A stretch of DNA of 64,000 nt. Origin: Octopus sinensis (lineage: Eukaryota). Of the stretch, positions 15,706 to 61,822 are shown piece after piece. Position 1 is the stretch's first letter. Each line of letters begins with the position of its first letter. A program made the translations under genes and the position numbers. The DNA lies in NCBI RefSeq assembly GCF_006345805.1, contig NC_043003.1, positions 27,466,001 through 27,530,000 of the forward strand, written 5' to 3'. Under the pieces are notes generated by a model. The model saw nothing but the letters and a program-made list of their open reading frames with translations. It was not told the DNA's origin and ran no database searches.

Positions 15706-17654
15706 GGATGCAACATATAGAATAATTATAAACAGGGCAAATTTTAGCCATTTCTCTGCAAACTGGTAAAAAATGACAAACAACCTTAATCAATTTTTGA
15801 GCCTTATTGGGTTCTCATCAGAGGCGTCATTCTAACAGTCTCTAGGGAAACAAGCAGCCAAACTGTTTATATACTCAACAAATGTAGCAGTTACTCTGTG
15901 AAGGGGTCCCTAATTTGCATACCGAAAGTGTTTAACACTCTATAAATACCAGTGGCCTGTCAATGGGGATCTTAGTCCACACAGTATGATAACAATTAGA
16001 TGTAGAGTGTACAAAGAAAAAAAAGACTGACAGTAGCAGGTTTAGTGAACATACCCTCCATAGACAATTCTGTCAGCAAATCTATCAGTTGCCTGTGTTT
16101 CAAATTTACAAGGAGACTGAAATTTACAAGAAGCTGGGACCTCACCTCAAGTTAAGAGCCAGAGTCACCCTAACCCTAACACTATTTCCACTGTAAGTGG
16201 AAAAAGGTGAATGGTTAACAACTTGTAATGTTATAGCTGAGGATTTTTGCAAATCGTATAAGAATTTCACTGGCCGATTGGGTAGTCGAGCTCTGCTCTC
16301 TTACCAGTGTTAAAATGGCTTGCACCTTTGAAAGGAGGCATGAGGAAGAGTTGTTGTAACATTGACTCTTCAAACGGGTTATCTTCCACTAATACTTTCA
16401 TTCTTCTCAACAGTTGAGAAGGCTTCTTATCTCCAAAAACTTCTTTGTGAAGGAGTTGGCAAAAGTACTTCTGTTTGGAGGTTGAAGAACGTCAGAAATT
16501 TTCTGCTTTCGTACTTTGATAAAATATGGAGTCAGAATGGTTGGTAATCAATTCTTTGACTTCACTGCTTAAGGTAAGAGGCAAAACATTGACTAAAAGG
16601 TGAAATTGGTGCATTTATGAAGAAATTTTGTTCACTGTGAAATAGCTTCGAGCTCAGGAAACCAATATATGGAGGTAAAGTGAAGGACAAGATAGCTTGA
16701 CTAGCTAACTATCGCTATTTCCAGAAGAAACGGATAGGACAAGTGAACTTGCCATTCTTTTTGGAACTGAGATTAGTTGAAATTACACAAATGAAAAGAT
16801 AAACTATTAAATACTGGCTGTTATAGCAAACTTTGAGAAGTTCAGGATCAACTTTCGAGAGAAGAGAGTTTCCTTGGTGTTGACAGGTAGACGTACTTGA
16901 CAGCTATTTCGAGCAAAACAAAAGCTCTGTCTAAGCTAACAGTGTTCTCAGTGTCAGCCTGTAGAGGAAAGAGTTGCAGTGGTAAGAATTGTATGTGTTA
17001 TGGCTTTTTCTCTCTTAGACCTTTTCTTCTCTTGGTGGTGGTAATTGTGGTGATAGGCATGGATCGTATTGAGGGTCACCAGTGTCACGAAGAATATGCG
17101 CTGTTGGCTGGTCTGAGGTGATGACTGATTGAAGTGCTGAGTAAAAATGTATTTCTCAGGCTGCATAAAGAAGTTACTGACAACATCCACAAACAATTAA
17201 GAGAGGATTTTATTATTGCATAAATTACAAATAGGTTGGCATTAGGAAGGGCATCAAGCTGTAGAAACCCTGCCAGATCAAGATTAGAGCCTGGTGCAGC
17301 CATCTGGTTCGCCAGTCCTCAGTCAAATCGTCCAACCCATGCTAGCATGGAGAGTGGATGTTAAACGATGATGATGATGAACAGTAATAATTACATACTT
17401 GGAGAGACATACTGTTTGGAGTTTACAACATGCATACTGATACAACAATCTAAGACTGGCCCATCATAACTGGAAACAATTGTGCTATATAAGCGGCAGT
17501 GAAGATTCCTATTGACAATCGGCCACTTAACCATTTGGCTGTGACAAGAATGGAGATGCGACGCACATTCTTCAATTATTGCCAAAAGCAACCATTTTAT
17601 AAGGTGCAAAGAGAAAATTCTAGAATATTGTATCTCACAATGGCTTGATGCTGG

Positions 17655-20600
17655 TTTCTTTTTTCTTTTTCTCTAGTTTCAGCTCAGAGCTGCGGCCATG
17701 CTGATGCACTGCCGTTTTGTGCTACACTGTTATTGCGAAGAACCTCGTCTAATATGTGGCACTTGGTGAAGAATGGAGTTGATATAGCTACTCTCATTTG
17801 CACCTCTTGCCGTGAGGTAGGTTCATTTGGGACTCTCAACAGGAAGATGTCCAGCTTTGATTTAAAAGTTCCTCAGACTCTTTAGGAGAATATTAAAAAG
17901 CTGTGGGCCCTTGAAACCCAGGCTGTTGCAGAAGCTGGTCCTGAAGCGTGATGGCATTGCTGGGATCTTTGGCACTATGCAGTGTCGTCCCGTTCTAGCA
18001 TTGGTGTAGCTTACAATGCCAAAATTTGGCACAATTCCTTCCAGGATCTTCCAGACATATATTACTGCATACCTCTCCCGTCTTCTCTCCAAAGAGTAGA
18101 GTCTTAGCTGTTTCAACCTTTCCCAGTAGCTGAGCTGTTGCAAAGAGACGATCTTCTTTGTGAATCTTCTCTGGATTGCTTCAAGGTCCGCTGTTAATTT
18201 TACACTGGTGGGTGACCATAGCTGTGAGCAGTAATCCAGGTGGCTGAGGACGAATGTCTGCCAGAGGACCATCATGGTTTCCTTATCTCTGGTTCTGAAT
18301 GTTCTTAGGCTCCACCCAGCCAGTCGTCTGCACTTTGTCGCCATCCTGGTAATGTGCACTTGGAAAGAGGTATCATCACTCATGTCGATACCCAGGTCCC
18401 TCACAGACTTAGGCTCTGGGATTGAAATTCCCTGTGGACCGGTGTATCCTGTAAGTTTAATATTCAGTTTTGGATGCTGGTAGTGCAGGGCCTGGAATTT
18501 TTCAGCATTAAACTGCATATTATTAACCTCAGCCCATCTGTAGATTGAGTCCAACTCCTGCTTTCTGCGAGACTTTCGTATCGTCTGCATAGCTGGCCAG
18601 AGTGGCTATCCGGGCATTTGAGGGCATATCTGAGAGGGCCACTATAAAAAGCAGTGGTCCCAAGACAGTGCCCTGTGGAACACCGCTCACTATTTGTGTG
18701 TTCATAGAGGTGGCTCCATTAACCACTACTGCCTGACTCCTATCTTTCAGGAAGTCATATAACCACACTCCAGGTTTTCCAACTATGCCGAGGTCACGCA
18801 GTTTGTGACATATCATACCATGATCCACCTTGTCAAAAGCTTTTGCAAAGTCAAGGTAGATTACATCCTCATTTGATTTGTTGAGTAACTGCCTCAACAC
18901 CCAGTCATAATGTTGTAAAAGCTGGGTCAGGCAGCTCCTACCTGGTCGAAAACCATGCTGGGTATCACTCAGCAAGTTATTTTCCTCAAGGAATGCGATT
19001 AGTTTCTTTCTGACTATCCGTTCCATGACTTTGCTGATGTGTGAAGTCAGAGAGATAGGCCTATAGTTTTTGGCATCTGCTCTACTTCCCCCTTTATGTA
19101 TTGGGCATATTATTCCCTCCTTCAGCTTGCTTGGCAGTTTGCCATTCGCAAGAAAGCTCTGGAAGAGAATCTTGAGGGGTTTTGCCAGGGCATGCTTACA
19201 CGCTTTGAGGAGGATGGCTGGGAAACCATCTAGACCAGCAGCTGAGTTTGTGTCCACTTCATCTATGGCTAGTAGGACATCTTTTTCGGTAATGTCAATA
19301 CATTCTATTGTAACCACCTTGCTGGTTATAGGTGAGGTGGCAAAGAAGTCCACTGGTTCGTTTACGTGTCTGTGTTCCAGACACTTTTGAACTGGTCATT
19401 CAGCATCTCACTGATCTTAGTTGGACTGTCTGTGAGGGAGCCATCCTTTTGGAGGAGGGGTCCTATCTTGTAGTGCACTGAGACTGTTTCTTTCGCGTAA
19501 TGAAAGAAGGCTTTTGGGTTTGATTTAATATTTTTTATAACCCAGGCTTCTTTGTCTGCTTTCTCCTTCACATAGGATTGTTGCAGCCTTTTTTCAGTCT
19601 CCATCAGTGTTGTTTTTAGGCGGGACGTTTCGCTACTTTTGGGATGTTGGTTGAGACGATTTGCAACCTTCGTCCGTCGTCTCACGAGGATCTTCCTGTC
19701 TCTTGGAATCTTGCTCCTATTTGTTTTGGCCTTGTGCTCTGGGACATATTTCTGGCATACGACTTGCACAGAAGACATGAAACATTCTAGTTTCATGTCA
19801 ATGTCTGGTGTGGAGAGACATTCCGGCCAGTCCTCTCTGAGGATCTCTTTTTGGATTGATTTCCAATCTGCTTTGTGGAAGTTCAGATTGGAGAGATTTC
19901 GGGTGCTTCCTTTAGGCTGTATGTCTCTGGTTACTTTTGGCCTAAACATAGACAGCTTTATTATGTTGTGATCCGAAACTGATGTCGGTGTCACTTTCAC
20001 ATCATGAATGATGTCCATATTGTTCGTGAAGCAGAGATCCAGAATGTTATTTGCCCTAGTTGGCTTGAGTACAACTTGCTCCATGAATAAGGCATTGGTG
20101 AGGTTGAGCAGGGACTCCACCTGTACTTGCTTGCAATGATTCATTCCTGAGAGTATGTGACCTTCAGGCCATTTGACGTTGGGGAAGTTGAAATCACCCA
20201 TAAGAAATATGGTCACTTGGTGTTCCAGATTTATGAGGATTTCTTTAATTCTTGTGAGGCAATCTTCAAACTTGCCTGTGTGATTTGGGGCATCCGGTGG
20301 GCAATATGTATTGCATATGACTATATTATGTTGTCTTATGTATACAATTAAAGTGTCACATACCGAATTTGAGTATGTCATTAAGACCTGGGGTGTGAGG
20401 TCATCTTGGATGTATACAGCAACTCCACCATGGCTTCTTTCCCTTCTGTCTGTTCGCAGTATGGCATAGTTTGGTATGTGTACTTCTGCATCCTCTATAT
20501 CAGGGTTGAAGTGAGTTTCCACAAGTGCTATGCATAGGGCTTGATTGCATGCAGTAAGATCTCTCAGGAAAGAAATTTTGTTTCTATTTTGATGCAACAG

Positions 20601-21200
20601 GCCCCCAATATTTAGTAAAAGTATTGGGGTGACGGCTGTGCAGGCGTTAGGGGAGGCCATCCCGTGTCTGTTGACTGTGGTGGTCTTGCATAGTGGTGGG
20701 CAGGGTTCCTTCTCTGTGCTTGGTGTAGCCAGGTTAGCTGCCGGACAATTCTTTGCGCCATGCATAAAAAAGACTCTTGCTCAGCTGCTGCGTTGCGCAG
20801 AACATCTGAGGAGCGCACTTCGTTTTTGAAAGTTTTCCTGGGAGACAATTTTTGTGTTCCCTCGGTAAAGCTTTTCTCTTTGAGTCCCCTGAAGTTCTGG
20901 CGGGGTGTCGGGTGGGCGAACCGGCAGTTTTTGCCGTCCTCACCATGCCAACATTTGCCCCGCAGGTAGAATTTACAGGTTCTTCGGTGCCTTCCAGATT
21001 TCTTCTTTCCTGAAGTGTACTAGGTGGCATTGGATCCTCCATGGGGTTCTCTGCTGTTTGTGTGGTGGGTTGGGGTTTCAGCTTTGGTTGTTTTGCCTTT
21101 TCCTCCTTATTTTTGGTTGGTTGCTTAATAGATCGGTCATGTGAAACTACTGTGGTCTGATCATGATGCTTGAGCGGTTAGCTTGCAGCCTGGTTTTGAA
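17655..21200 (-). mobile_element. Near full-length CR1/L2-like LINE (CCCH finger, APE endonuclease, reverse transcriptase), inactivated
   Basis: ORF 19362-20765 has APE motifs (ALVETH, GGVAVY, MGDFNFP, NILDLCFT, SDHN). ORF 18529-19353 has RT motifs (YRPISLTS, QHGFRPGRSC, YLDFAKAFDKV, GVPQGTVLGPLLF, YADDT). ORF 17862-18590 is the RT C-terminus. Simple A-rich 3' tail at ~17655-17675. 5' boundary approximate. Confidence 0.95.
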
Positions 21201-31132: not shown

Positions 31133-31147
31133 AGAAAATTCGAGAAA
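31133..31147 (+). promoter_or_regulatory. Perfect three-unit heat-shock element (HSE)
   Basis: aGAAaaTTCgaGAAa matches nGAAnnTTCnnGAAn exactly, ~1 kb upstream of the ZFAND2 ATG. Confidence 0.65.
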
Positions 31148-31228: not shown

Positions 31229-31521
31229 CCGGAAGTGGATCTATGTCTGTACTTGTATGTGTATGTATGTGTGCGTGCGTGTGTGTAAATGTCACAGTAA
31301 ACGGAAGTGACGTTTTTACAATTGTGGTGATAAAGGTGACAGCGGCGGGGAAGAAGCCAGCATGTAGAGGTCGGCGACGACGACGGTGGTGGAAGTGCAG
31401 TTAGAAGCAAGCAGCAGCAGGATTGAGCGATAGAGGCGGTGGTGTTAGTAGTGGCGGCGGAAGAAGCAGCAGTAGTAGTAGTAGTAGCACTGGCGGTGGT
31501 GGTTAGCAGGGTATTATAAAA
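31229..31521 (+). promoter_or_regulatory. Putative core promoter of ZFAND2: two ETS/GABP-type sites and a TATA-like box
   Basis: CCGGAAGTG 31229-31237, ACGGAAGTG 31301-31309, TATAAAA 31515-31521; locally GC/CpG-rich. TSS not determinable. Confidence 0.45.
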
Positions 31522-32166: not shown

Positions 32167-32221
32167 ATGGAATTTCCTCATCTGGGTGCTAATTGTGGTG
32201 AATCTACCTGTAAAATGCTGG
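32167..32221 (+). CDS. ZFAND2B: AN1-type zinc finger protein 2 (AIRAP/AIRAPL family), coding exon 1 (MEFPHLGANCGESTCKML+G)
   Basis: N-terminus closely matches the ZFAND2A/B pattern MEFPDLGxHC; donor G|GTAATT, phase 1, joins exon 2 to make Asp (LDFLP). Paralogue A versus B cannot be resolved from this part. Confidence 0.93.
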
Positions 32222-32356
32222 GTAATTATACAGATTTATATTTTTCTCTTTGCAACATTTCATTTCACTCTCTCAGTCACACTAACCATTATTACCGCAC
32301 CTGTCTTCTCGTGACAAAATGTTTGTCTTCTCCACAGCTTGTCTTATATGTATGTG

Positions 32357-32407
<51 letters not shown>

Positions 32408-32632
32408 AATATAAATATATACAATATATACATAAACTAGGTGTTTCTATCTAAATATATGTTCGTTTGCCTAATTGCTTTTCTTATAGTTTTATCATCT
32501 ATCTATGTATCTATCTGACTATAATTGTCTGTCTGCGCTGTTTGTCAGTTTGTCCAGCTGTCTGCCTTTCTCAGTAGATGTCTCTTTTCGTCTTTTACTG
32601 TCCATCTACCATATCTAGCTATCTGTGTGTGA

Positions 32633-32672
<40 letters not shown>

Positions 32673-33232
32673 CTGTTTTCTGTCCGTCAAGATATCTGAC
32701 TTTCTATCTATATGTGTATGTCTGTCAGACTATCTATCAGGGTGTCTACGTATCTACCAGTCTGTCTCTAAATTTAGCTATCCATCTGTCTGCATGTTTA
32801 TATATCTATCATACTGCTTATGTGTGCGTATGTCATATTTGTCGGTTTCTGTTCAACTAACCATTAGTTTATTTGTCCATCTATCTGTCATATCTAGTTA
32901 CCTCCGCGTATATCTACACATCTATCTTTTTACCTATCCTTCTAGCTATTCTCTATATGTCTGTCTATCTTTCATCGAGTCCATTTAGTTGTCTGTCAAA
33001 CTGCCAAGCTTTTTACCACCTACGAATTAAGTGTCTTTGACCATCTTTCTGCGGCACATCTAAGCTATCACTCTTCATGTCAATTTAGCTGTCTTTCTAT
33101 AACAGACCACTTAGCTGTCTATCTACATGTTCATCTAGGCCTCTACCTGTATCTCTAGATTTCCACACAGCTGGCTATTTCTAGATTCCTTTAAAGCTGT
33201 CTTTCTCTCTCTCTCTCTTCTCTCTCTCTCTC

Positions 33233-33324
<92 letters not shown>

Positions 33325-33370
33325 AATAGCTGTCTTTCTCTTCAACAGTTCATATAACTATCTTGCTACA

Positions 33371-36300
33371 TGTCCATACAGCTGGTCATTTCTATACCTG
33401 TCCATCTCTCTCTCCCACTCTTCTCTCTCTTTCTTATATATATATATATGTATATTGTCTCTTTCCCTACATGCCCACCTCACTATTTGCCTCTCATACC
33501 TGCATCTCTTCCTGTCTCTCTGTTTCTCCACCTGTCCATCAGACACTCTGTCGCTCTACCTGTTCATAACACTGTCTGCCACTCTACCTGTCCATCAGAG
33601 AGTCTGCTTTTCTTCCTGCCCATCAGACAGTCTGCCTCTCTACCTGACCATCAGACAGTCTGCCTCTCTACATGACCATCAGACATTCTGCTTTTCTTCT
33701 GCCCATCAGACAGTCTGCCTCTCCACCTGACCATCAGACAGTCTGCCTCTCTACCTGACCATCAGACAGTCTGCCTCTCTACCTGACCATCAGACAGTCT
33801 GCCTCTCTACCTGACCATCAGACAGTCTGCCTCTCTACCTGACCATCAGACAGTCTGCCTCTTTACCTGTCTATGAGAGAGTTTGCCTCTCTACCTGACC
33901 ATGAGACAGTCTGCCTCTCCACCTGACCATCAGACAGTCTGCCTCTCCACCTGACCATCAGACAGTCTGCCTCTCCACCTGACCATCAGGCAGTCTGCCT
34001 CTCTACCTGTCCATCAGACAGTCTGCCTCTCTACCTGTCCATCAGACAGACTGCCTCTCTACCTGTCCATCAGACAGTCTGCCTCTCTACCTGTCCATCA
34101 GACAGTCTGCCTCTCTACCTGTCCATCAGACAGTCTGCCTCTCTACCTGTCCATCAGACAGTCTGCCTCTCTACCTGTCCATCAGACAGTCTGCCTCTCT
34201 ACCTGTCCATCAGACAGTCTGCCTCTCTACCTGCCCATCAGACAGTCTGCCTCTCTACCTGACCATCAGACAGTCTGCCTCTCTAACTGACCATCAGACA
34301 TTCTGCTTTTCTTCCTGCCCATCAGACAGTCTGCCTCTCTACCTGACCATCAGATAGTCTGCCTCTCTACCTGACCATCAGAAAGTCTGCCTCTTTACCT
34401 GTCTATGAGAGAGTTTGCCTCTCTACCTGACCATCAGACAGTCTGCCTCTCCACCTGACCATCAGGCAGTCTGCCTCTCCACCTGACCATCAGACAGTCT
34501 GCCTCTCCACCTGACCATCAGACAGTCTGCCTCTCCACCTGTCCATCAGACAGTCTGCCTCTCTACCTGTCCATCAGACAGTCTGCCTCTCTACCTGTCC
34601 ATCAGACAGTCTGCCTCTCTACCTGTCCATCAGACAGTCTGCCTCTCTACCTGTCCATCAGACAGTCTGCCTCTCTACCTGTCTATGAGAGAGTCTGCCT
34701 CTCTACCTGTCTATGAGAGAGTCTGCCTCTCCACCTGACCATCAGACAGTCTGCCTCTCTACCTGTCCATCACACAGTCTGCCTCTCTACATGTCCATCA
34801 TACAGTCTGCCTCTCTACATGTCCATCATACAGTCTGCCTCTCTACATGTCCATCAGACAGTCTGCTCCTCTACTTGTCCATCAGACAGTCTGCCTCTTG
34901 TCCATCAGAGAGTCTGCCCCTCTAGTTGTCCATCAGACGGTCTGCCTCTCTACTTGTCCATCAGACAGTCTGTCTCACTCTTCCTGTCCATCACACAGTC
35001 TATCTCTCTCCCTGTCCATAGTCTGCCTCTCTACTTGTCCATTACACAGCCTGTCCCACTACCTGTCCATTACACAGCCTGTCCCACTACCTGTCCATTA
35101 CACAGTCTGTCCCACTACCTGTCCATTACACAGTCTGTCCCACTACCTGTCCATTAAACGGCCTGTCTCACTACCTGTCCGCTACACAGCCTTTCTCTCT
35201 ACCTGTCCGTTACACAGCCTGTCTCTCAACCTGTCCATCACACAGTCTTTCTCTCTCCCTGTCCACAGTCTGCCCTACCTGTCCGTCGCACAGCCTGTGT
35301 CCCTAGCTGTCCATCGCGCAGCCTGTGTCCCTACCCGTCCGTCGCGCAGCCTGTGTCCCTACCCGTCCGTCGCGCAGCCTGTGTCCCTACCCGTCCGTCG
35401 CGCAGCCTGTGTCCCTACCCGTCCGTCGCACAGCCTGTGTCCCTACCCGTCCGTCGTGCAGCCTGTGTCCCTACCCGTCCGTCGCGCAGCCTGTGTCCCT
35501 ACCCGTCCGTCGCGCAGCCTGTGTCCCTACCCTCCGTCACGCAGCCTGTGTCCCTACCCGTCCGTCGCGCAGCCTGTGTCCCTACCCGTCCGTCGCGCAG
35601 CCTGTGTCCCTACCCGTCCGACGCATCTGCCTGTGTCCCTACCCGTCCGACGCATCTGCCCGATAAACAGCCTGTCTTTTTACCCGTGCATTAAATAGCC
35701 TGTCTCTCTACCCAGCTGTTAAATAGCCTGTCTCTCTACCCGTCCGTTAAACAGCCTGTCTCTCTACCCGTCCGTTAAACAGCCTGTCTCTCTACCTGTC
35801 CGTTAAACAGCCTGTCTCTCTACCTGTCCGTTAAACAGCCTGTCTCTCTACCTGTCCGTTAAACAGCCTGTCTCTCTACCTGTCCGTTAAACAGCCTGTC
35901 TCTCTACCTGTCCGTTAAACAGCCTGTCTCTCTACCTGTCCGTTAAACAGCCTGTCTCTCTACCTGTCTGTTAAACAGCCTGTCTCTCTACCTGCCCGTT
36001 AAACAGCCTGTCTCTCCATCTGTCTTTTTAACTCACTACCTGTCCATTATGCAGAATCTCTTAATACCTGTCCATAACACATCTTGTCTCCCTACCTGTC
36101 TGTTACACAGCCTGTCTCCCTACCTCTCCATTACACTGCCTGTCTCCCTACCTCTCCATTACACAGTTTGTCTCCCTACCTGTCCGTTACACGGCCTGTC
36201 TCTCTACCTGTCCGTTACATATGCCCATCTCCATACCTGTCCATTACACAGTCTGTCTCCTTGCCTGATGGTTACACAGTCTATCTCTCTACCAGAAGTG

Positions 36301-39300
36301 TTATGCTACATCTCCCTCTACCTGAAGTGTTACGCAGCCTGTCCCTCTACCTGAAGTGTTACGCAGCCTGTCCCTCTACCTGAAGTGTTACGCAGCCTGT
36401 CCCTCTACCTGAAGTGTCCATGCAGCTGGTTATTTCTATACCTGTCCATCTCTCTCCCTCGTTCCTTTCTATCTCTTATATTTATATTGTCTCTTTCCCT
36501 ACATGCCCACCTCACCAATTACCTCTCTTACTTGCATCACTTCCTGTCTATCTCTGTTTCTCCACCTGTCCATCAAACACTCTGCCGCTCTACCAGGCCA
36601 TCACACTGTCTGCCTCTCTACCTGTTCCTCAGACAGTCTGCCTCTCCACCTGACCATCAGTCTGCCTCCACTTGACTATCAGACAGTCTGCCTCTCCACC
36701 TGACCATCAGACAGTCTGCCTCTCCACCTGACCATCAGACAGTCTGCCTCTCCACCTGACCATCAGACAGTCTGCCTCTCCACCTGACCATCAGACAGTC
36801 TGCCTCTCCACCTGACCATCATACAGTCTGCCTCTCCACTTGTCCACCAGACAGTCTGCCTCTCTACTTGTCCATCAGACAGTCTGCCTCTCTACTTGTC
36901 CATCAGACAGTCTGCCTCTCTACTTGTCCATCAGACAGTCTGCTCCTCTACTTGTCCATCAGACAGTCTGCCTCTCTACTTGTCCATCAGACAGTCTGCC
37001 TCTCTACTTGTCCATCAGACAGTCTGCCTCTCTACTTGTCCACCAGACAGTCTGCCTCTCTACTTGTCCACCAGACAGTCTGCCTCTCTACTTGTCCACC
37101 AGACAGTCTGCCTCTCTACTCGTCCATCAGACAGTCTGCCTCTCCACCTGTCCGTTAAACAGCCTGTCTGTCTACCTGTCCGTTAAACAGCCTATCTCTC
37201 TACCTGTCCGTTAAACAGCCTGTCTCTCTACCTGTCCGTTAAACAGCCTGTCTCTCTACCTGTCCGTTAAACAGCCTGTCTCTCTACCTGTCCGTTAAAC
37301 AGCCTGTCTCTCTACCTGTCCGTTAAACAGCCTGTCTCTCTACCTGTCCGTTAAACAGCCTGTCTCTCTACCTGTCCGTTAAACAGCCTGTCTCTCTACC
37401 TGTCCGTTACCAGCCTGTCTCTCTACCTGTCCGTTAAACAGCCTGTTTCTCTACCTGTCCGTTAAACAGCCTGTCTCTCTACCTGTCCGTTAAACAGCCT
37501 GTCTCTCTACCCGTCCGTTAAACAGCCTGTTTCTACCTGTCCTCTACCTGAAGTGTTACACAGTTCGTCTCTCTACCTGAAGTGTCTGTGTACATGTCCA
37601 TTACACAACCTGTCTCACTACTTGTCCGTTACACAGAATCTCTCCCTACCTGTCCGTTACACGGCCTGTCTCCCTTCCTGTCCGTTACACGGCTTGTCTT
37701 CCGACCTGAAGTGTTACACAGCCTGTCCCTTTACCTGAAGTGTTACACAGCCTGTCCCTCTACCTGAAGTGTTACACAGCCTGTCCCTCTACCTTAAGTG
37801 TTACACAGCCTGTCCCTCTACCTGAAGTGTTACACAGCCTGTCCCTCTACCTGAAGTGTTACACAGCCTGTCCCTCTACCTGAAGTGTTACACAGCCTGT
37901 CCCTCTACCTGAAGTGTTACACAGCCTGTCCCTCTACCTGAAGTGTTTCACAGCCTGTCCCTCTACCTGAAGTGTTTCACAGCCTGTCCCTCTACCTGAA
38001 GTGTTTCACAGCCTGTCCCTCTACCTGAAGTGTTTCACAGCCTGTCCCTCTACCTGAAGGTTTCACAGCCTGTCCCTCTACTGAAGTGTTTCACAGCCTG
38101 TCCCTCTACCTGAAGTGTTTCACAGCCTGTCCTCTACCTGAAGTGTTTCACAGCCTGTCCCTCTACCTGAAGTGTTTCACAGCCTGTCCCTCTACCTGAA
38201 GTCGTTCACAGCCTGTCCCTCTACCTGAAGTGTTTCACAGCCTGTCCCTCTACCTGAAGTGTTTCACAGCCTGTCCCTCTACCTGAAGTGTTTCACAGCC
38301 TGTCCCTCTACCTGAAGTGTTTCACAGCCTGTCCCTCTACCTGAAGTGTTTCACAGCCTGTCCCTCTACCTGAAGTGTTTCACAGCCTGTACCTCTACCT
38401 GAAGTGTTTCACAGCCTGTCCCTCTACCTGAAGTGTTTCACAGCCTGTCCCTCTACCTGAAGTGTTTCACAGCCTGTCCCTCTACCTGAAGTGTTCACAG
38501 CCTGTCCCTCTACCTGAAGTGTTTCACAGCCTGTCCCTCTACCTGAAGTGTTTCACAGCCTGTCCCTCTACCTGAAGTGTTTCACAGCCTGTCCCTCTAC
38601 CTGAAGTGTTTCACAGCCTGTCCCTCTACCTGAAGTGTTTCACAGCCTGTCCCTCTACCTGAAGTGTTTCACAGCCTGTCCCTCTACTGAAGTGTTTCAC
38701 AGCCTGTCCCTCTACCTGAAGTGTTTCACAGCCTGTCCCTCTACCTGAAGTGTTTCACAGCCTGTCCCTCTACCTGAAGTGTTTCACAGCCTGTCCCTCT
38801 ACCTGAAGTGTTTCACAGCCCGTCTTTCTACCTACTGGTTACACAGCCTGTCTGTCTGCCTGATGGTTACATAGCCTGTCTCTCTACCTGTCACTCTCTG
38901 CCTGTCCTTTTGACACTGTCTCTCTCTGCCTGTCCATCCGACAGTCTGTTACTCTCTACCTGTCCATCACACAGTCTGTCTCTTTTTCCTCGTCCATCAG
39001 ACACTCTGTCAATCTCTGCCTGTCCATCCGACAGTCTGTTACTCTCTACCTGTCCATCACACAGTCTGTCTCTTTTTCCTCATCCAGCAGACACTCTGTC
39101 TCTCTCTCTGCTTGTTCATCAGACTGTCTGTCTGTCTCTCTCTCTCGCTGCCTGTTCATCAGACTGTCTGCATCTCTACCTGTCCATCTCACAGTCTGTC
39201 ACACTCTATCTGTCCATCACCCAGTCTCTCTCTCTCTCTCTACCTTTGCATCACATAGTCTGTCTCTCTCTCCCTGTCCGTGTAACAGTCTGTCTCTCTC

Positions 39301-40800
39301 TCCCTGTCCGTGTAACAGTCTGTCTCTCTCTCCCTGTCCGTGTAACAGTCTGTCTCTCTCTCCTGTCCGTGTAACAGTCTGTCTCTCTCTCCCTATCCGT
39401 GTACAGTCTGTCTCTCTCTCTCTCTCTGTCCGTGTAACAGTCTGTCTCTCTCTCCCTGTCCGTGTAACAGTCTGTCTCTCTCTCCCTGTCCGTGTAACAG
39501 TCTGTCTCTCTCTCCCTGTCCGTGTAACAGTCTGTCTCTCTCTCCCTGTCCGTGTAACAGTCTGTCCCTCTACCATGCCGTCTCGCAGTCTGTCTCTCTA
39601 CCTGTCTGTCTAGCAGTCTGTCTCTCTACCTGTCTGTCTAGCAGTCTGTCTCTCTACCTGTCTGTCTAGCAGTCTGTCTCTCTACCTGTCCGTCTAGCAG
39701 TCTGTCTCTCTACCTGTCCGTCTAGCAGTCTGTCTCTCTACCTGTCCGTCTAGCAGTCTGTCTCCCTACCTGTCCGTCTAGCAGTCCGTCTCCCTACCTG
39801 TCCGTCTAGCAGTCCGTCTCTCTACCTGTCCGTCTAGCAGTCCGTCTCTCTACCTGTCCGTCTAGCAGTTCGTCTCTCTCCCTGTTCGTCTAGCAGTCCG
39901 TCTCTCTCCCTGTTCGTCTAGCAGTCCGTCTCTCTCCCTGTTCGTCTAGCAGTCCGTCTCTCTCCTGTTCGTCTAGCAGTCCGTCTCTCTCCCTGTTCGT
40001 CTAGCAGTCCGTCTCTCTCCCTGTTCGTCTAGCAGTCCGTCTCTCCCTGTTCGTCTAGCAGTCCGTCTCTCTCCCTGTTCGTCTAGCAGTCCGTCTCTCT
40101 CCCTGTTCGTCTAGCAGTCCGTCTCTCTCCCTGTTCGTCTAGCAGTCCGTCTCTCTCCCTGTTCGTCTAGCAGTCCGTCTCTCTCCCTGTTCGTCTAGCA
40201 GTCCGTCTCTCTCCCTGTTCGTCTAGCAGTCCGTCTCTCTCCCTGTTCGTCTAGCAGTCCGTCTCTCCCTGTTCGTCTAGCAGTCCGTCTCTCTCCCTGT
40301 TCGTCTAGCAGTCCGTCTCTCTCCCTGTTCGTCTAGCAGTCCGTCTCTCTCCCTGTTCGTCTAGCAGTCCGTCTCTCTCCTGTTCGTCTAGCAGTCCGTC
40401 TCTCTCCCTGTTCGTCTAGCAGTCCGTCTCTCTCCCTGTCCGTCTAGCAGTCCGTCTCTCTCTCTCTGTTCGTCTAGCAGTCCGTCTCTCTCTCTGTTCG
40501 TCTAGCAGTCCGTCTCTCTACCTGTCCTTCTAGCAGTCCGTCTCTCTACCTGTCCGTCTAGCAGTCTGTCTCTCTACCTGTCCGTCTAGCAGTCTGTCTC
40601 TCTACCTGTCTATCTAACAGTCTGTCTCTTCTCTACCTGTCCGTCTAGCAGTCTGTCTCTCTACCTGTCCGTCCAGCAGTCTGTCTCTCTACCTGTCCGT
40701 CCAGCAGTCTGTCTCTCTACCTGTCCGTCCAGCAGTCTGTCTCTCTACCTGTCCGTCCAGCAGTCTGTCTCTCTACCTGTCCGTCCAGCAGTCTGGTTTC
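33371..40800 (+). repeat. Composite minisatellite (~7.4 kb, roughly 240-250 monomers of 28-30 bp in at least seven related sub-arrays) in ZFAND2 intron 1
   Basis: Monomers include CAGTCTGCCTCTCTACCTGTCCATCAGA, CAGCCTGTGTCCCTACCCGTCCGTCGCG, CAGCCTGTCTCTCTACCTGTCCGTTAAA, CAGCCTGTCCCTCTACCTGAAGTGTTTCA, CAGTCTGTCTCTCTCTCCCTGTCCGTGTAA and CAGTCCGTCTCTCTCCCTGTTCGTCTAG. Copy number estimated from length. Confidence 0.97.
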
Positions 40801-41079
40801 TCCCTGTCCGTCTTTCTATCTGTTTGTCTTTTGCTTTCTGGAAGAGATTGATTCTGGTCAACCTTGGAGCAAGATGGACTCAGCCAGCTCTAAAAGTTGC
40901 AGAGAAACTTCAGTCAAGTTTCATAAATCTTTTGGGAGTCAGTTTAATATTTCCTGGCCTTTCAATACCAAACTGTTGCTGTATGGCAACACACACACAC
41001 ACTAATGGTCTCAGGAGAAGGCAGTACAATGGCGCGGCGTTTACTGTATTGGCTAAAACAAAACTAAAATGAAGACTTG

Positions 41080-43085
41080 TCATCATCATCATCATCATCA
41101 TCGTTTAACGTCCGCTTTCCGCGCTAGCACGGGTTGGACGGTTTGACCGGGTCTGGGAAGCCAGGGGCCGCTCCAGGCTCCAGTCTGAATCTGGCAGAGT
41201 TTCTACGGCTGGATGCCCTTCCTAACGCCAACCACTCCGTGAGTGGATTGGGTGCTTTTTACGTGCCACCTGCACAGGGGCCGGAGGGTCCGGCATCGTC
41301 ACGATCGGATTCGAGCATTTTAACGTGTCAGCGGCACGGGGGCAACGAGGTCCGGGGTACTTTGGGGATTGGGGTATTTTGGGGATCCAGGGTACTTTGG
41401 GGATCCGGGGTACTTAGAATGGGTAGGGGGGTACTTAGAATGGGTAGGGGGGGTACTTAGAATGGGTAGGGGGTATGTGGAATTGCTGCAGAAAGCAGCC
41501 CGGGTCTTTGTAGTCACAGCATATCTCCAGAGATCTCGGTCCTTCGCCATTGCCTCAGTGAGGCCCAATGCTCTGAGGTCATGCTTGACCACCTCATCCC
41601 ATGTCTTCCTGGGTCTACCTCTCCCCCTGATACCTTCAACTGTTTGGGAGTGGCACTTCTTCACACATCTCTCTTTCCATCCGCAGCACATGACCATACC
41701 ATCGCAAGCGTCGCTCTTGCACACCACATCTGATGCTTCTTATATCCAGCATTTCTCTCAGGATACTTACACTCTGTTTTGCGTGCACACTGACACTACA
41801 CATCCAGCGGATCATGCTAGCTTCATTTCTTTCAAGTCTACGCATGTCTCTGCAGTCACAGCCCATGTTTCATTACCGTGAAGCATGGCAGTTCGCACAC
41901 ATGCATCATATAATCTACCTTTGCTCTGAGGGAGAGGCTTTGTTGCCAGTAGGGGTAGGAGCTTTCTGAACTTTGCCCAGGCTATTCGTATTCTAGTGGT
42001 GATACTCTCTGTGCATCCACCTCCGCTACTAACTTGGTCTCCCAGGTAGCGGAAACTATCAACTACTTCTAGTTTCTCTCCCTGGAGTGTGATGGAATCT
42101 GTTTCTGAGTGTCTGTTGTGTCTATTGTCCCTGTGCATCTGCCGCACATGAAAGCTATCTTATCTGTTAATTTCCCTTTAATGTTGCTGCACCTCTTATG
42201 TGTCCATAACTTACATTGGGTGCATCTTATGGAGTTTCTACCTGTACCTTCCTACAGGTTGAGCAGGGCCACCTACCCGAGGGGATGTGTGTTGAGTACC
42301 TCTTGCTGCTTACTAATACTTTGGTCTTTGCTACATTTATTCTAAGGCCTTTGATTCCAACCCTTGCTTCTACCCGAAATTTCTCTTCTAGTTCCGGTAG
42401 TGATTCTGCTATGAGAGCTAGGTCATCGGCATAGAGGAGCTCCCAGGGGCATCCCGTTTTGAATTCCTCTGTTATTGCTTGAAGTACTATGATGAACAAA
42501 AGGGACTGAGGCTGAGCCCTGGTGCACACCTACTTCTACTCGGAATTCTTCACTATATTCGTTGCCAATCCTAACCTTGCTAACAGCCTCTCTGTATAGA
42601 GCCTGTACAGCCCTTATTAGCCATTCTTCAATCTCCAGTTTCCGCATCGACCACCAGATAAGGGAACGGGGAACCCTGTCAAAGGCTTTCTCCAAGTCTA
42701 CAAAAGCTATGTAGAGGGTTATCTTTAGCTAGGTACTTCTCCTGCAGTTGTCGGACCAGGAATATAGCATCAGTGGTGCTTCTACCTGGTACAAAACCGA
42801 ACTGCATTTCATCTAAACAAATTCTCTCCCTAATGAGATTGGTTATGACCTTCTCTGAGACCTTCATCACCTGGTCCAACAGTTTGATACCTCTGTAGTT
42901 ATTTCTATCTAGAGCATCACCCTTACCTTGTAGCAGTTGACTATGGTACTGCTGCACCAGTCATTGGGTATGGCTCCATTGTGAACTACCTGGTTTACAA
43001 TGCGGGTGACTATGGCATGGCCCACATAGCCAGCTGTTTTAAGCATCTCAGCAGTGATTCCTGATAGGCCAGGGGCTTTGCCTGA
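41080..43085 (-). mobile_element. 5'-truncated RTE-clade LINE (RT domain to (GAT)n tail), antisense in intron 1, frameshifted
   Basis: Motifs GKAPGLSGITAEMLK, NYRGIKLL, QFGFVPGRSTTDAIF, LEKAFDRVP, VGVHQGS, LLYADDLAL, FRYLGD and RGRGRPRKTW spread over shifted frames. Confidence 0.93.
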
Positions 43086-51407: not shown

Positions 51408-53599
51408 AAAAAGGATGACAGAAGCAATTGACCTCAGATTTCAATTCAGAATGTAAAGACCCAGAAGAAATGCATCTCTAACATTTTTCTGATGCTTTAA
51501 TGATTCTACCAACTCACTGCCTTAACCCTTTAACTGTGAAATTGAATTTCAGCATTATTCCAGTTAGGATTATTCCAACTATTTACCAAAAAATAGAATT
51601 GGTATTTTCTGCAAGTTATGTTGCCTCAGTAAACTTGACACATCTCAAATGTTTCAAACATGAACTTCTTCAACAACAGATAGATTGGTATATGAAACTG
51701 TATTCTGAACTTGAGGGTAATGATATTCTGAGTAGATATATTTCATTTCAGCAGCAAAAGGTTTATTAATCATCATCATCTAACGTCCGCTTTCCATGCT
51801 AGCATGGGTTGGACTTGACTGAAGGACTGGCGACCCAGATGGTTGCGCTAGGCTCCAATCTGATCTGGCAGAGTTTCAACAGCTGGATGCCCTTCCTAAA
51901 ACCAACCACTCCGAGAGTGTAGTGGGTGCTTTTATATGCCACCGGCATGAGGGCCAGTCTGGCAGTACTGGCAATGGTCACGCTCGAAATGGTGTTTTTT
52001 ATGTGCCACCTGCACAGGAGTCAGTCCAGCGGCACTGGCAACAACCTCGCTCGAATGTTTTGCTCAAGTGCCAGTAAGGCGATGCTGGTAATATTGATAA
52101 TAATAATGACTCATTTGCCATTAGGATGAAGGATGAGGAGGACAATACAAAGACAGACGATAATCATAATGTAACTTATGTGTGTTTGTGCTTTACAGAT
52201 TGAGCAATAGGATATAAGTATGTGCTTATATCTTTGTATATTATAAACATAGTAAAATAGGTACCTGTCTATATGACTGATCTAGCAGTATGTATGTGTT
52301 TTCAAAAATCAATCCTTACAGTCTTATGTATATTTTTAGTTTCTTTTGTTGTTTTTTCCCCTCATTATCTAATTGTGATAATGACTAATTTTTTGGTGGG
52401 GGTTGAGAGGCTTGACTAATATGCTGATGTGTTTTATAAACACATACCTAAACACATGCACACTTACCCTCACATTGTTGTATACCATACACTTAGACAC
52501 TCATTCTTAAGTATCTACTTTGGACAGTTAAGATAAACACACACAAATATATCTATTTTGCACAGTTAATTACAGTAAGCATGCATGCACACATACACAC
52601 AATCTCTGTCTGTCAGTTTCTCTCTCATTAACTTAATTTTATGACCTTTTGCACTGGATGACACTGAAATAAGTAAATAGACCTTATAAAAAGTCTGTTT
52701 ACCATTTGTAGATAGCAGAATTAGTAGATGAAATTTTTTTGTTTATGCAGCTGTGTGAGTAAGAAACTTGTGTCTCAACCATGTGGTTTTGCTTTCAATC
52801 CCCCTATGCAGCACCTTTGGGCAATTGTCTTTTCTACTGTAGCCCTGGGGTAATCAAAACCTTGCAAGTGGATTTGGTAGACAGAAACTGAAAAAAGACT
52901 ATTGTGTGTGTGTATATGTACCACAAAACCTTCAAAAACTAAACATGAATATGTAAGTGTTATCTAAACCTAATTAGATTACCTATGAAGATAACCAGAC
53001 AATACCAATGTAAGTGATCCCAGCAAACTATGCATCCACAAACACTTTCCTGCTTACAAGAATGAAGGACAACTCAGAATAACAAGACAAACATAAGACA
53101 TTCATAATTGTGCATAACAAGTATGTGTTTTCATCATCAACTGCCAAATGAAATCACTATGGTTTTGCCATTTGGGCAGCACCATTCAATCTGGTGGTGT
53201 CAACAGCATTAGAAATATAAATGGGACCTGAGAATCCATAAACTTATTACAACTATTAACATCAAAGTAAACAAATAGTAACTTACAGTTACAAAATAGT
53301 ACTTATAAAACAAAGAATTTTTTCAGACACACATACTGTTGACATTCAGACAATACAATGAACATAGACTACTAGATACTTTTGTTTCCCAATCTACATC
53401 ACATCATAAACATGATATCACACCAAATACTAGCCTAATAAAGACTAGTAGAATAGTATATCTCATAAACAACATTCTTGAACAATGTACAAAGAAAAGA
53501 TCAAGCTTGGATCAATATCTCTGAAACAAGTTCAATACTATAAAATTTATTAATCAAACAAATTGCTTATTAAAAGTAAAATAAAATGCAAAAAGGGAA

Positions 53600-54320
53600 A
53601 TCATCATCATCATCGTTTAATGTCTGTTTTCTATGCTGGCATGGGTTGGACAGTTTGACTGAGGTCTGGAGAGCCAGCAGCTGCACCAGGCTCCAATCTG
53701 TTCTGGCAATGTTTTTATAGCTGGATGCCCTTCATAATGCCTACCACTCCAAGAGTGTAGTGGGTGCTTTTTATGTGTCACTGGCACAGGAGCCAGTCAG
53801 GTGGGCCTGGCATTGATCACGTTCAGATGGCGCTTTTTATGTGCCACCAGCACAAGAGCCAGTCAAGGGGTACTGGCATTGGGCATGATCAGTTGGTGCT
53901 TTTTACGTGCCATTAGTGCGGGAACCAGTCAGGCAGACCTGGCAAGTGCTTTTTATGTGCCAAAAAAATTTGACATTTCTTTATGCAGCTGTTATGAATG
54001 AAGACAACAGTGTAAAGAAGTGCTGATCTCTGACTGTGGAGGGAACCTGTGAAAAGGTGGACCCAGGAAGAAATTGGACAAAGTGGTAAAGCATGATCTT
54101 TGAATAATGGGTCTCATGGAAGCAATGACAAATGATCGAGACCTTTGGCAATTTACGTTTTTGAGAAGACTTGTCAAGCCAAGTGAAACCATAGTTGTGG
54201 CCAGTGCTGGTGACATGTAATCGGCACCTATTACACTCTTGGAGTGGTTGACATTAGGAAGGGCATCCATCCATAGAAGCCAAGTCAAATCAGCTCTCTG
54301 ACTTACCAGTTCCAGTCAAA
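53600..54320. mobile_element. Two RTE 3' fragments in opposite orientation
   Basis: 53600-53960 matches the RTE tail on the minus strand; 53995-54320 matches the RTE ORF end and UTR on the plus strand. Confidence 0.75.
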
Positions 54321-57741: not shown

Positions 57742-57784
57742 ATTTTTTGCCAATGAAGTGTGATGCTTGTTCTCAAGTATTTTG
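57742..57784 (+). CDS. ZFAND2B: ZFAND2 coding exon 2 (43 nt; DFLPMKCDACSQVFC)
   Basis: Acceptor TTGCAG| and donor |GTGAGT; continues the AN1 finger in frame (phase 1 to phase 2). Not in the ORF track. Confidence 0.95.
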
Positions 57785-61770: not shown

Positions 61771-61822
61771 CCGTGATCATATTCAGTATGCAACACACAA
61801 ATGTCCAGAATCATACAAAAAG
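61771..61822 (+). CDS. ZFAND2B: ZFAND2 coding exon 3 (52 nt; RDHIQYATHKCPESYKK)
   Basis: Acceptor TTTTCTAG| and donor AAG|GTAACT; completes the Cys codon (TG+C) and supplies the H..H.C ligands of AN1 finger 1. Confidence 0.95.

What the first reader, a model, noticed from the sequence alone, without database searches (positions are those of the whole stretch)
33371..40800. A 7.4-kb minisatellite family built on a 7 x 4-nt code: a visible record of microsatellite-to-minisatellite evolution
Every sub-array monomer parses into seven tetramers: A CAGT-CTGC-CTCT-CTAC-CTGT-CCAT-CAGA; B CAGC-CTGT-CCCA-CTAC-CTGT-CCAT-TACA; C CAGC-CTGT-GTCC-CTAC-CCGT-CCGT-CGCG; D CAGC-CTGT-CTCT-CTAC-CTGT-CCGT-TAAA; G CAGT-CTGT-CTCT-CTAC-CTGT-CCGT-CTAG. 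E (+1 nt) and F (+2 nt) are indel derivatives. Units 1, 2, 4 and 5 are nearly invariant while unit 7 labels each sub-array. A degenerate (CTAT/CTGT)n field at ~32480-33180 grades into the array. Single variants sweep whole blocks (TTACA to TTTCA at ~37945), and array G has similar edges around a newer centre. All monomers share one orientation, ~1.1 kb into intron 1. Origin from a tetranucleotide microsatellite is inference.
Basis: partly seen in the sequence, partly recalled or inferred. Interest (0 to 1): 0.7.

Follow-up and report, generated by a model that had tools for sequence, protein, structure and literature searches.

The report
Layered 28-base minisatellite in an octopus intron
A 7.4-kb stretch in the first coding intron of a zinc-finger gene, probably from an octopus, is a real tandem array of about 260 copies of a 28-base unit that grew by repeated rounds of duplication, an ordinary kind of non-coding repeat with an unusually legible history.

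Summary
Positions 33371-40815 carry about 262 head-to-tail monomers (168 of 28 nt, 44 of 29, 17 of 30). All are on the + strand, and none occurs elsewhere in the window.

The array lies 1,150 nt into the first coding intron (32222-57741) of an AN1-type zinc-finger gene. The host is probably an octopod.

The 4-nt sub-periodicity is statistically real in the A, D and G units: 18-21 of 28 bases match (CTGT)7, P 0.0002-0.0014 against dinucleotide shuffles. It is not significant in B or C. It is a fossil rather than a code, because monomer lengths change by 1 or 2 nt and never by 4.

The upstream (CTAT/CTGT)n field is real (z = 11) and unique in the window. An unrelated Octopus sinensis locus holds compound microsatellites made of CTAT, CTGT, CTCT and CTAC, one with a 20-nt super-period. 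This makes a microsatellite origin plausible but unproven.

I found no relatives outside the window, no transposon hallmarks and no evidence of function. It is a new member of a known kind and of low interest.

The parts
32167..32221 (+). Coding part of exon 1 of an AN1-type zinc-finger gene (MEFPHLGANCGESTCKML, then the first base of Asp); GT donor at 32222
   Evidence: Sequence read. Spliced with exons 2 and 3 it gives a full zf-AN1 match, E = 8e-13. Nearest solved structures are ZFAND1-type AN1 fingers.
32480..33190 (+). Decayed compound tetranucleotide field, (CTAT/CTGT)n-like, interrupted by (AT)n; followed by (TC)n at 33200-33269 and (TA)n at 33269-33322
   Evidence: Lag-4 match 0.44 against 0.29 in dinucleotide shuffles, z = 11. 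The commonest 4-mers are TCTA/ATCT/TATC/CTAT and TGTC/TCTG/CTGT/GTCT. Besides the array, it is the only place in the window with a density of these 4-mers above 0.2. TRF rows.
33371..33543 (+). Leader 1: degenerate monomer-like sequence with a short (TC)(TA) tract; left end of super-block 1
   Evidence: Aligns with 36415-36577 at 88% substitution identity (142 matches, 19 mismatches, 14 gap columns). BLAST gives 82% over 173 nt.
33544..35046 (+). Sub-array A of block 1: 54 monomers of 28 nt, variants A, x (CCTGACC), a (CCACCTGACC), t (CTACTTG); contains a 532-nt (19-monomer) higher-order duplication
   Evidence: The same order of rare variants recurs 532 nt apart, for example 33851 and 34383.
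35047..35265 (+). Sub-array B (8 monomers)
35266..35667 (+). Sub-array C (15 monomers; 4 CpG per 28 nt)
35668..36026 (+). Sub-array D of block 1 (13 monomers)
36027..36425 (+). Transitional T-type monomers (GTTACA tail), then a short E array (29-mers) that ends super-block 1
36415..36577 (+). Leader 2: a copy of leader 1 and the start of super-block 2
36578..37131 (+). Sub-array A of block 2 (20 monomers; a then t variants, including the same rare GCTCCTC variant as block 1)
   Evidence: The monomers at 34859 and 36936 are identical.
37132..37547 (+). Sub-array D of block 2 (15 monomers; same consensus as D of block 1)
37548..38871 (+). Transitional T-type monomers, then the expanded E array (40 monomers of 29 nt; TTACA becomes TTTCA from 37922)
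38872..39255 (+). Mixed, mostly 30-nt monomers, including a 90-nt (3 x 30) unit present twice (38914-39001 and 39002-39091)
39256..39557 (+). Sub-array F (10 monomers of 30 nt; a G-like unit with one extra CT)
39558..40815 (+). Sub-array G (45 monomers): G edges, derived g centre at 39866-40505, h variant at 40649-40788
   Evidence: g lies 7 edits from A and from D, while G lies 4 from each.
57742..57784 (+). Exon 2 of the AN1 gene (DFLPMKCDACSQVF); acceptor AG at 57740-57741, donor GT at 57785
61771..61822 (+). Exon 3 of the AN1 gene (C-RDHIQYATHKCPESYKK); coordinates approximate

Best explanation
This is a locus-specific, complex minisatellite (VNTR-type tandem array) in the first coding intron of an AN1-type zinc-finger gene. 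The host genome is most likely octopod. It has no demonstrated function. It is best read as a by-product of iterated tandem duplication.

Proposed history, with each step marked as shown or inferred:
1. Inferred: a compound tetranucleotide tract of the CTAT/CTGT/CTCT/CTAC type, common in octopus DNA, accumulated interruptions.
2. Inferred: a seven-tetramer, 28-nt stretch then became the unit of duplication.
3. Shown: the 28-mer diversified into sub-families that occupy contiguous blocks. New variants spread locally, which is what unequal sister-chromatid exchange or replication slippage with gene conversion would produce.
4. Shown: larger units were duplicated in turn. There is a 90-nt trimer, a 532-nt 19-mer and a roughly 3.05-kb super-block (leader, A, [B, C], D, T, E).
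5. Shown: the two super-block copies then expanded and contracted independently. B and C occur only in copy 1. E has 4 units in copy 1 and 40 in copy 2.
6. Shown: current changes in unit length come from CT-dinucleotide slips and 1-nt indels, not from 4-nt steps.
For: Existence, orientation and locality.

Lag-4 periodicity. Best identity to (CTGT)7 is G 21/28, A 19/28 and D 18/28. P is at most 0.0017 against mononucleotide shuffles and 0.0002-0.0014 against dinucleotide-preserving shuffles.

Adjacent field. It has the same motif on the same strand (z = 11). Outside the array it is the only place in the window with that tetramer density, on either strand.

Related-genome analogue. The O. sinensis locus L003, fetched for another reason, has compound arrays of CTAT (37), CTGT (27), CTCT (4), and of CTAT (63), CTAC (33), CTGT (8). 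One shows a 20-nt super-period. The three commonest in-phase tetramers of the array are CTGT, CTCT and CTAC.

Hierarchy. The sub-family order is colinear in both blocks, and the blocks share a rare variant.

The g centre is derived relative to the G edges.

No transposon hallmarks: no inverted repeats other than (TA)n artefacts, and the flanks are unique in the window.

A review describes how short repeats give rise to longer units through cycles of duplication and divergence (PMC5615363).
Against: - The microsatellite origin is not directly observable. B and C show no significant 4-nt periodicity.
- The sub-family closest to (CTGT)7 is G, at the far end of the array from the field, so the 'grading' is not monotonic.
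- No monomer-length variants differ by 4 nt.
- D and the a/t variants are identical between the two super-blocks, yet the leaders differ by about 12%. This requires continued homogenisation between blocks or faster decay of the leaders.
- Genome-wide uniqueness could not be tested. No assembly of the source species or of its relatives was searchable by DNA.
- Some 27/28-nt variants are single-base losses in short runs of C or T. They could be long-read consensus errors.
Confidence: 0.7

Rival explanations
1. The 28-mer belongs to a dispersed satellite family or to the internal tandem-repeat region of a transposon. This locus would then be only one of many copies.
For: Octopod DNA is repeat-rich. 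The window shares many dispersed elements with a random O. sinensis locus at 77-94% identity, and a SINE-like element lies 270 nt downstream of the array. Genome-wide absence was not testable.
Against: - All 172 core matches lie inside the array and none lies elsewhere in the 64 kb.
- There are no terminal inverted repeats around it.
- Both flanks are unique in the window.
- The 10-nt core is absent from the 21.5-kb O. sinensis sample.
- There are no related translated ORFs in 5.8 billion proteins.
- Pattern scans of metagenome, prokaryote-genome and viral contigs gave only two unrelated short hits.
- The monomer core strings searched (CTCTACCTGTCCAT, CTCTACCTGTCCGT and their reverse complements) occur in only three unrelated papers.
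Confidence: 0.12
2. The 4-nt periodicity is secondary. It would be a by-product of pyrimidine-rich composition and slippage inside monomers, and the neighbouring tetranucleotide field would be a coincidence in a genome full of such tracts. On this view the 28-mer arose by duplication of an ordinary low-complexity sequence.
For: - (CT)n slippage demonstrably operates inside monomers: F is +CT, and there are 26- and 30-nt variants of g.
- B and C lack significant periodicity.
- Tetranucleotide tracts are so common in octopus DNA (five in 21.5 kb) that adjacency alone is weak evidence.
- There are no length variants of plus or minus 4 nt.
Against: - The periodicity survives dinucleotide-preserving shuffles (P = 0.0002 for G).
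- Lags 4, 8 and 12 clearly exceed lag 2 (15, 15 and 18 against 9 for G).
- C occupies the first position of all seven tetramers.
- The in-phase tetramers are those that co-occur in octopus compound microsatellites.
- No other field of this type is present in the window.
Confidence: 0.25
3. The array is functional. It might be an intronic regulatory VNTR, a platform for pyrimidine-tract-binding factors, or a set of decoy 3' splice sites acting on the AN1 gene's pre-mRNA.
For: - The array lies 1.15 kb from exon 1, on the sense strand, and fills 29% of the intron.
- Each unit reads as a pyrimidine-rich tract (64-75% pyrimidine) ending in CAG. This resembles a 3' splice site; that is a direct reading of the sequence, not a scored prediction.
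- GC content is 0.50-0.55 against about 0.38 in the surroundings.
Against: - There is no conservation evidence and no match to any Rfam family.
- Sub-families turn over rapidly and differ at many positions, which is the pattern of neutral concerted evolution.
- No expression data are available.
Confidence: 0.08
4. The length or block order of the array is an assembly artefact.
For: Arrays of 7 kb made of near-identical 28-mers are hard to assemble. Several monomers differ only by a single-base loss in a C or T run (for example 38066, 38123, 38470, 39950, 40365), which is typical of long-read consensus errors.
Against: - There are 146 distinct monomer sequences, arranged in an ordered, non-random variant map.
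- The junctions are unique.
- The two super-blocks have diverged by about 12% in their leaders.
- An assembler collapse or expansion would not create this structure.
Confidence: 0.08

Closest known systems
Classical complex minisatellites / VNTRs with internal variant maps (for example the human hypervariable minisatellites studied by variant-repeat mapping; recalled from general knowledge)
   Same: - The unit is 28-30 nt and the array is kilobase-scale, head to tail and genic.
- There is strong strand asymmetry: GC skew is about -0.4, with 64-75% pyrimidine on one strand.
- Variant units are arranged in blocks.
- Variants spread locally.
   Different: - Length polymorphism and germline instability are untested here.
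- The array is unusually long and carries nested higher-order duplications of 90 nt, 532 nt and 3.05 kb.
- Any similarity of GGACAGGTAG (minus strand) to the G-rich minisatellite 'core' is a recollection, not a test.
Satellite DNAs whose monomers derive from shorter repeats through cycles of duplication and divergence, and higher-order repeat (HOR) organisation (review PMC5615363)
   Same: - The periodicity is hierarchical: 4, then 28, then 90 or 532, then 3,046 nt.
- Blocks are homogenised.
- Array G has older edges around a younger centre.
   Different: - It is a single euchromatic intronic locus of 7.4 kb, not a heterochromatic array of hundreds of kilobases or more.
- Each higher-order unit is present only twice, so these are segmental duplications rather than a homogenised HOR array.
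Compound tetranucleotide microsatellites of octopus genomes (seen in O. sinensis locus L003, 13538-13836 and 15088-15548)
   Same: - The tetramer vocabulary is the same: CTAT, CTGT, CTCT, CTAC.
- The strand bias is the same.
- One of them already shows a 20-nt super-period.
   Different: In those arrays the 4-nt unit is still the unit of repetition. Here the repeating unit is 28-30 nt, and only 54-75% of its bases fit a tetranucleotide consensus.

Membership tests
Minisatellite / VNTR | Repeat unit of roughly 10-100 nt | tested here: met
   168 units of 28 nt, 44 of 29 and 17 of 30. TRF periods are 28, 29 and 30.
Minisatellite / VNTR | Head-to-tail tandem arrangement in one orientation, with an array of 0.5 kb to tens of kb | tested here: met
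   262 contiguous monomers over 7.4 kb, and all 172 core matches are on the + strand.
Minisatellite / VNTR | Single, euchromatic or genic locus rather than a dispersed or heterochromatic family | tested here: inconclusive
   It is genic (the intron of an AN1 gene) and unique within the 64 kb. A genome-wide search of the source species was not possible. External scans were empty or unrelated.
Minisatellite / VNTR | Copy-number polymorphism between individuals | not testable with these tools
   No second assembly or read set of the species was reachable. Exact-protein look-ups of ORFs at or in the locus found nothing.
Satellite DNA with higher-order repeats | A multi-monomer unit repeated many times, with higher identity between HOR copies than between monomers within a copy | tested here: not met
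   The multi-monomer units (90, 532 and about 3,046 nt) each occur only twice. The super-block leaders are only 88% identical.
Satellite DNA with higher-order repeats | Very long (100 kb to Mb) heterochromatic or centromeric arrays | tested here: not met
   The array is 7.4 kb and is flanked by unique intron sequence and exons.
Tetranucleotide microsatellite (as the present-day state) | A 4-nt unit is the unit of tandem repetition and of length change | tested here: not met
   The period is 28-30 nt. Only one monomer has 24 nt and none has 32. The upstream field 32480-33190 does meet this feature in decayed form.
Transposon-internal tandem repeat | The array is bounded by transposon termini (TIRs or LTRs) or lies next to transposon ORFs of the same element | tested here: not met
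   Only (TA)n artefacts appear among the inverted repeats. The nearest reverse-transcriptase ORFs are 13 kb away on the other strand. The downstream SINE-like copy is a separate dispersed element.

The most novel reading that the evidence does not exclude
The locus preserves every stage of tandem-repeat growth in one place: a decayed compound tetranucleotide tract, a 28-mer, 90-nt and 532-nt higher-order units, and a 3-kb duplicated super-block. If so, comparison of the orthologous intron across octopod species could date each step and directly test the microsatellite-to-minisatellite transition. A bolder version is that about 260 sense-strand units of pyrimidine tract plus CAG near exon 1 affect splicing or transcription of a stress-type AN1 zinc-finger gene.
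Probability: 0.3. Interest if true: 0.4.

Novelty: new member of a known kind. Interest (0 to 1): 0.2.

Why it matters
The main value is as a clean worked example. Few minisatellites show the short ancestral periodicity, the probable parental tract next door and three further levels of duplication all at one locus.

If the orthologous intron in related octopods holds earlier stages, the locus could calibrate how fast such arrays are born and homogenised in cephalopod genomes, which are rich in tandem and interspersed repeats.

On a practical level, sub-arrays A, B and C are open in all three + frames and yield mechanical ORFs of up to 283 aa. Gene callers could mistake these for proteins.

The array does not change any current understanding of tandem-repeat evolution.

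Tried and rejected
1. Orthologues of the AN1 gene, wanted in order to fetch the orthologous intron. The 50-aa spliced peptide found no candidate in the word-indexed protein search, so no comparison between species was possible.
2. The translated A-array as a probe for other arrays. 8,000 word candidates were collected and none scored E <= 0.001.
3. Exact-protein look-ups of the exon-1 read-through ORF and of the 283-aa array ORF. Neither is on record.
4. DNA pattern scans. The first metagenome pattern gave nothing. A two-unit pattern gave two contigs, which turned out to be an unrelated 29-nt x 4.5 repeat and a chance match. Prokaryote genomes and viral contigs gave none.
5. Rfam and tRNA scans of the window. 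Nothing was found, so there is no RNA-family explanation.
6. Inverted repeats that would bound a transposon. Only (TA)n artefacts were found.
7. A literature search for the monomer core. It returned three papers on unrelated subjects.
8. A decayed 28-nt periodicity in the upstream field. Lag 28 is not above lags 20 or 24 there. There is only a weak bump at lag 26 in 33000-33200. The field is therefore a decayed tetranucleotide tract, not an old minisatellite.
9. A period-14 or period-7 substructure of the monomer. Neither is better than period 4.
Full report
**1. What is there**

TRF reports tandem arrays with periods of 28, 29 and 30 nt running from 33525 to 40813. The region stands out in composition: GC is 0.50-0.55 against about 0.38 around it, and GC skew is about -0.4.

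I decomposed positions 33501-40830 by wraparound alignment against a generic 28-mer. This gave 262 monomers: 168 of 28 nt, 44 of 29 and 17 of 30. There are 146 distinct monomer sequences.

A degenerate core pattern with up to three mismatches matches 172 times. Every match is on the + strand and lies between 33526 and 40795, with none expected by chance. The only correction is that the array ends near 40815 rather than 40800.

**2. Layout**

| Segment | Coordinates | Notes |
|---|---|---|
| Leader 1 | 33371-33543 | |
| A | 33544-35046 | 54 units |
| B | 35047-35265 | 8 units |
| C | 35266-35667 | 15 units, 4 CpG per unit |
| D | 35668-36026 | 13 units |
| Transitional 'T' units with a GTTACA tail | 36027-36305 | |
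| E | 36306-36425 | 4 units of about 29 nt |
| Leader 2 | 36415-36577 | |
| A | 36578-37131 | 20 units |
| D | 37132-37547 | 15 units |
| T | 37548-37718 | |
| E | 37719-38871 | 40 units; TTACA becomes TTTCA at 37922 |
| Mixed units, mostly 30 nt | 38872-39255 | |
| F | 39256-39557 | 10 units of 30 nt |
| G | 39558-40815 | 45 units |

Within G, the G-type edges enclose a g-type centre at 39866-40505. Symmetrical intermediates (G carrying TCCG) lie on both sides. The g form is 7 edits from A and from D, while G is only 4 from each.

**3.

- The two leaders align at 88% substitution identity: 142 matches, 19 mismatches and 14 gap columns. BLAST gives 82% over 173 nt.
- The sub-family order after each leader is colinear. 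Copy 1 runs a/x, A, t, [B, C], D, T, E. Copy 2 runs a, t, D, T, E.
- A rare variant, CAGTCTGCTCCTCTACTTGTCCATCAGA, sits at the corresponding place in both copies, at 34859 and 36936.
- A super-block of about 3,046 nt was therefore duplicated. The copies then changed independently. B and C exist only in copy 1. E has 4 units in copy 1 and 40 in copy 2.
- Inside A of copy 1, a 19-monomer (532-nt) segment occurs twice with the same order of rare variants, for example at 33851 and 34383.
- In the mixed region, a 90-nt trimer of 30-mers occurs twice, at 38914-39001 and 39002-39091.
- The hierarchy is 4, then 28, then 90 or 532, then about 3,046 nt.

**4. The '7 x 4-nt code'**

| Unit | Best identity to a tetranucleotide repeat (best unit) | P, dinucleotide-preserving shuffles |
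|---|---|---|
| G | 21/28 (CTGT) | 0.0002 |
| A | 19/28 (CTGT) | 0.0014 |
| D | 18/28 (CTGT) | 0.0008 |
| B | 15/28 (CTGT) | 0.22 |
| C | 16/28 (CTGC) | 0.20 |

Against mononucleotide shuffles P is at most 0.0017 for G, A and D.

For G, the matches at lags 4, 8 and 12 are 15, 15 and 18 of 28. This clearly exceeds lag 2, which gives 9. C occupies the first position of all seven tetramers.

The periodicity is therefore real in the less derived units. Nothing suggests it is maintained. Among the monomers, one has 24 nt and none has 32. The visible length changes are CT-dinucleotide slips (F, and the 26- and 30-nt variants of g) and single-base indels. 'Fossil periodicity' is a better description than 'code'.

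**5. The upstream field**

- Positions 32480-33190 have a lag-4 match of 0.44 against 0.29 ± 0.017 in dinucleotide-preserving shuffles. The contrast statistic has z = 11.
- The commonest 4-mers are the four rotations of CTAT and the four rotations of CTGT.
- The density of these eight 4-mers exceeds 0.2 only in this field and in the F and G part of the array. It does so nowhere else in the window on either strand.
- Lag 28 is not elevated in the field, so it is a decayed tetranucleotide tract and not an old minisatellite. There is a weak bump at lag 26 in 33000-33200.
- The leader contains monomer-like pieces.
The grading is not monotonic, however. The unit closest to (CTGT)7 is G, which lies at the opposite end of the array.

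**6. Evidence from a relative**

The only sizeable protein match in the window is a LINE endonuclease ORF at 19362-20765 on the minus strand. Its best hit is an Octopus sinensis protein at 54% identity.

I fetched that protein's locus (L003, 21.5 kb of O. sinensis chromosome CM016884.1). It shares many dispersed repeats with the window at 77-94% identity. The window is therefore most likely from an octopod, though not necessarily from this species.

L003 contains no copy of the 28-mer core. It does carry five tetranucleotide arrays of the TATC/GATA/TCTA type. Two of them are compound:
- 13538-13836 has CTAT 37, CTGT 27, CTCT 4, and TRF reports a 20-nt super-period (TATCTGTCTGTCTATCTATC).
- 15088-15548 has CTAT 63, CTAC 33, CTGT 8.

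The three commonest in-phase tetramers of the minisatellite are CTGT, CTCT and CTAC. This shows that the proposed raw material is abundant in octopus DNA and can acquire longer periods. It is circumstantial support for the origin model, not proof.

**7. Context**

- Exon 1 is 32167-32221, with a GT donor at 32222.
- Exon 2 is 57742-57784.
- Exon 3 is about 61771-61822.
- Together they splice into MEFPHLGANCGESTCKMLDFLPMKCDACSQVFCRDHIQYATHKCPESYKK. This peptide matches the whole zf-AN1 model (PF01428, positions 1-40 of 40, E = 8e-13). It also matches solved AN1 fingers.
- The N-terminus resembles ZFAND2 (AIRAP) proteins. That comparison comes from my memory and was not tested.
- The intron is 32222-57741, or 25.5 kb. 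The array starts 1,150 nt into it and fills 29% of it, on the sense strand.
- Whether an untranslated exon lies upstream cannot be told without RNA data, so 'first coding intron' is the safe term.

**8. Is it part of something known?**

- No inverted repeats bound the array.
- Its flanks are unique in the window.
- The window has no Rfam or tRNA hits.
- Searches outside the window found no relatives.
The test that matters most, whether the monomer occurs elsewhere in the source genome, therefore remains open.

**9. Mechanism and comparison**

The block-wise distribution of variants, the sweep of a single substitution through about 30 adjacent E units, the derived centre between older edges in G, and the nested segmental duplications all fit the expected outcome of unequal exchange, slippage and conversion in tandem arrays.

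A review states that shorter units give rise to longer ones through cycles of duplication and divergence, and that higher-order repeats arise by joint amplification of adjacent monomers (PMC5615363).

By unit size, arrangement and genic setting the locus qualifies as a complex minisatellite. It fails the tests for a true HOR satellite, because each higher-order unit occurs only twice and the array is only 7.4 kb. It also fails the test for a transposon-internal repeat.

A functional role cannot be excluded but has no support. Candidates would be a regulatory VNTR, or a series of sense-strand pyrimidine tracts ending in CAG that act as decoy splice acceptors.

**10. Verdict**

The periodicity and the neighbouring tract are real, 'code' is an overstatement, and the microsatellite origin is plausible (about 0.55-0.6) but inferred. 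The locus is a new member of a known kind. It is a tidy illustration rather than a surprise, and I score its interest at 0.2.

Noticed in passing
window 31134-31146 and 31515-31521: A perfect heat-shock-element-like trimer (GAAAATTCGAGAA, fitting nGAAnnTTCnnGAAn) lies about 1 kb upstream of the AN1 gene's ATG. A TATAAAA lies about 650 nt upstream of the ATG. The trimer pattern occurs three times in the window against 0.6 expected. This would fit a stress-inducible ZFAND2/AIRAP-type gene, but the evidence is weak.
   Followed up: partly
window 17862-20765 (- strand) and 8315-8791 (- strand): A LINE-type retrotransposon has its endonuclease (Exo_endo_phos_2) and reverse transcriptase (RVT_1) split over three consecutive ORFs, so it is probably degraded. 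A second RT fragment is at 8315-8791. The best protein hit is an Octopus sinensis protein at 54% identity.
   Followed up: partly
window 41084-41343; also 4710-4963, 53600-53853, 51769-51955, 17234-17380, 15580-15711, 9894-9988: A SINE-like dispersed element of about 260 nt is preceded here by (CAT)7. At least eight copies occur in both orientations within the window at 77-84% identity. It is also present in the O. sinensis locus L003 at about 77-90%. The copy at 41084 is followed by 18-22-nt tandem repeats (GGGGTACTTAGAATGGGTAGG) at 41351-41473.
   Followed up: partly
window 33370-37214 (+ strand), e.g. 34847-35698: Sub-arrays A, B and C contain no stop codon in any + frame, so mechanical ORFs of up to 283 aa run through the repeat. 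They have no homologues. Gene callers could mis-annotate them as proteins.
   Followed up: yes
window 33544-40815 (+ strand): On the sense strand of the intron, nearly every monomer reads as a pyrimidine-rich tract ending in CAG, which resembles a 3' splice site. The x and a variants contain CTGAC, which resembles a branch point. No donor-like GTRAGT motif accompanies them. This was read directly from the sequence. It was not scored with a splice-site model.
   Followed up: no
window 38066, 38123, 38470, 38672, 39346, 39950, 40365 (monomer starts): Several monomers differ from their neighbours only by the loss of one base in a short C or T run. These may be real slippage or long-read consensus errors, and the sequence alone cannot distinguish the two.
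   Followed up: no
window 35291-35623: Sub-array C carries 4 CpG per 28-nt unit, while A, B and E carry none. Several differences between sub-families are CG/TG or CG/CA alternations (CCGT against CCAT, CCGT against CTGT). This suggests methylation-driven CpG decay or its reversal by conversion.
   Followed up: no
L003 13538-13836 and 15088-15548 (Octopus sinensis CM016884.1): These are compound tetranucleotide microsatellites mixing CTAT, CTGT, CTCT and CTAC. One has a 20-nt super-period. Five tetranucleotide arrays of this family occur in 21.5 kb.
   Followed up: partly
window 32343-32400 and 32620-32670: A composite TGTGTGAGTGT...(TA)n motif occurs twice upstream of the array. (TC)n(TA)n composites recur at 33200-33322 and inside both leaders. 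This suggests that the upstream low-complexity field also grew by duplication of larger segments.
   Followed up: no
window 5016-5472 and 53759-53944: A 226-nt unit occurs twice in tandem at 87% identity. A 66-nt unit occurs 2.8 times, overlapping a SINE-like copy.
   Followed up: no
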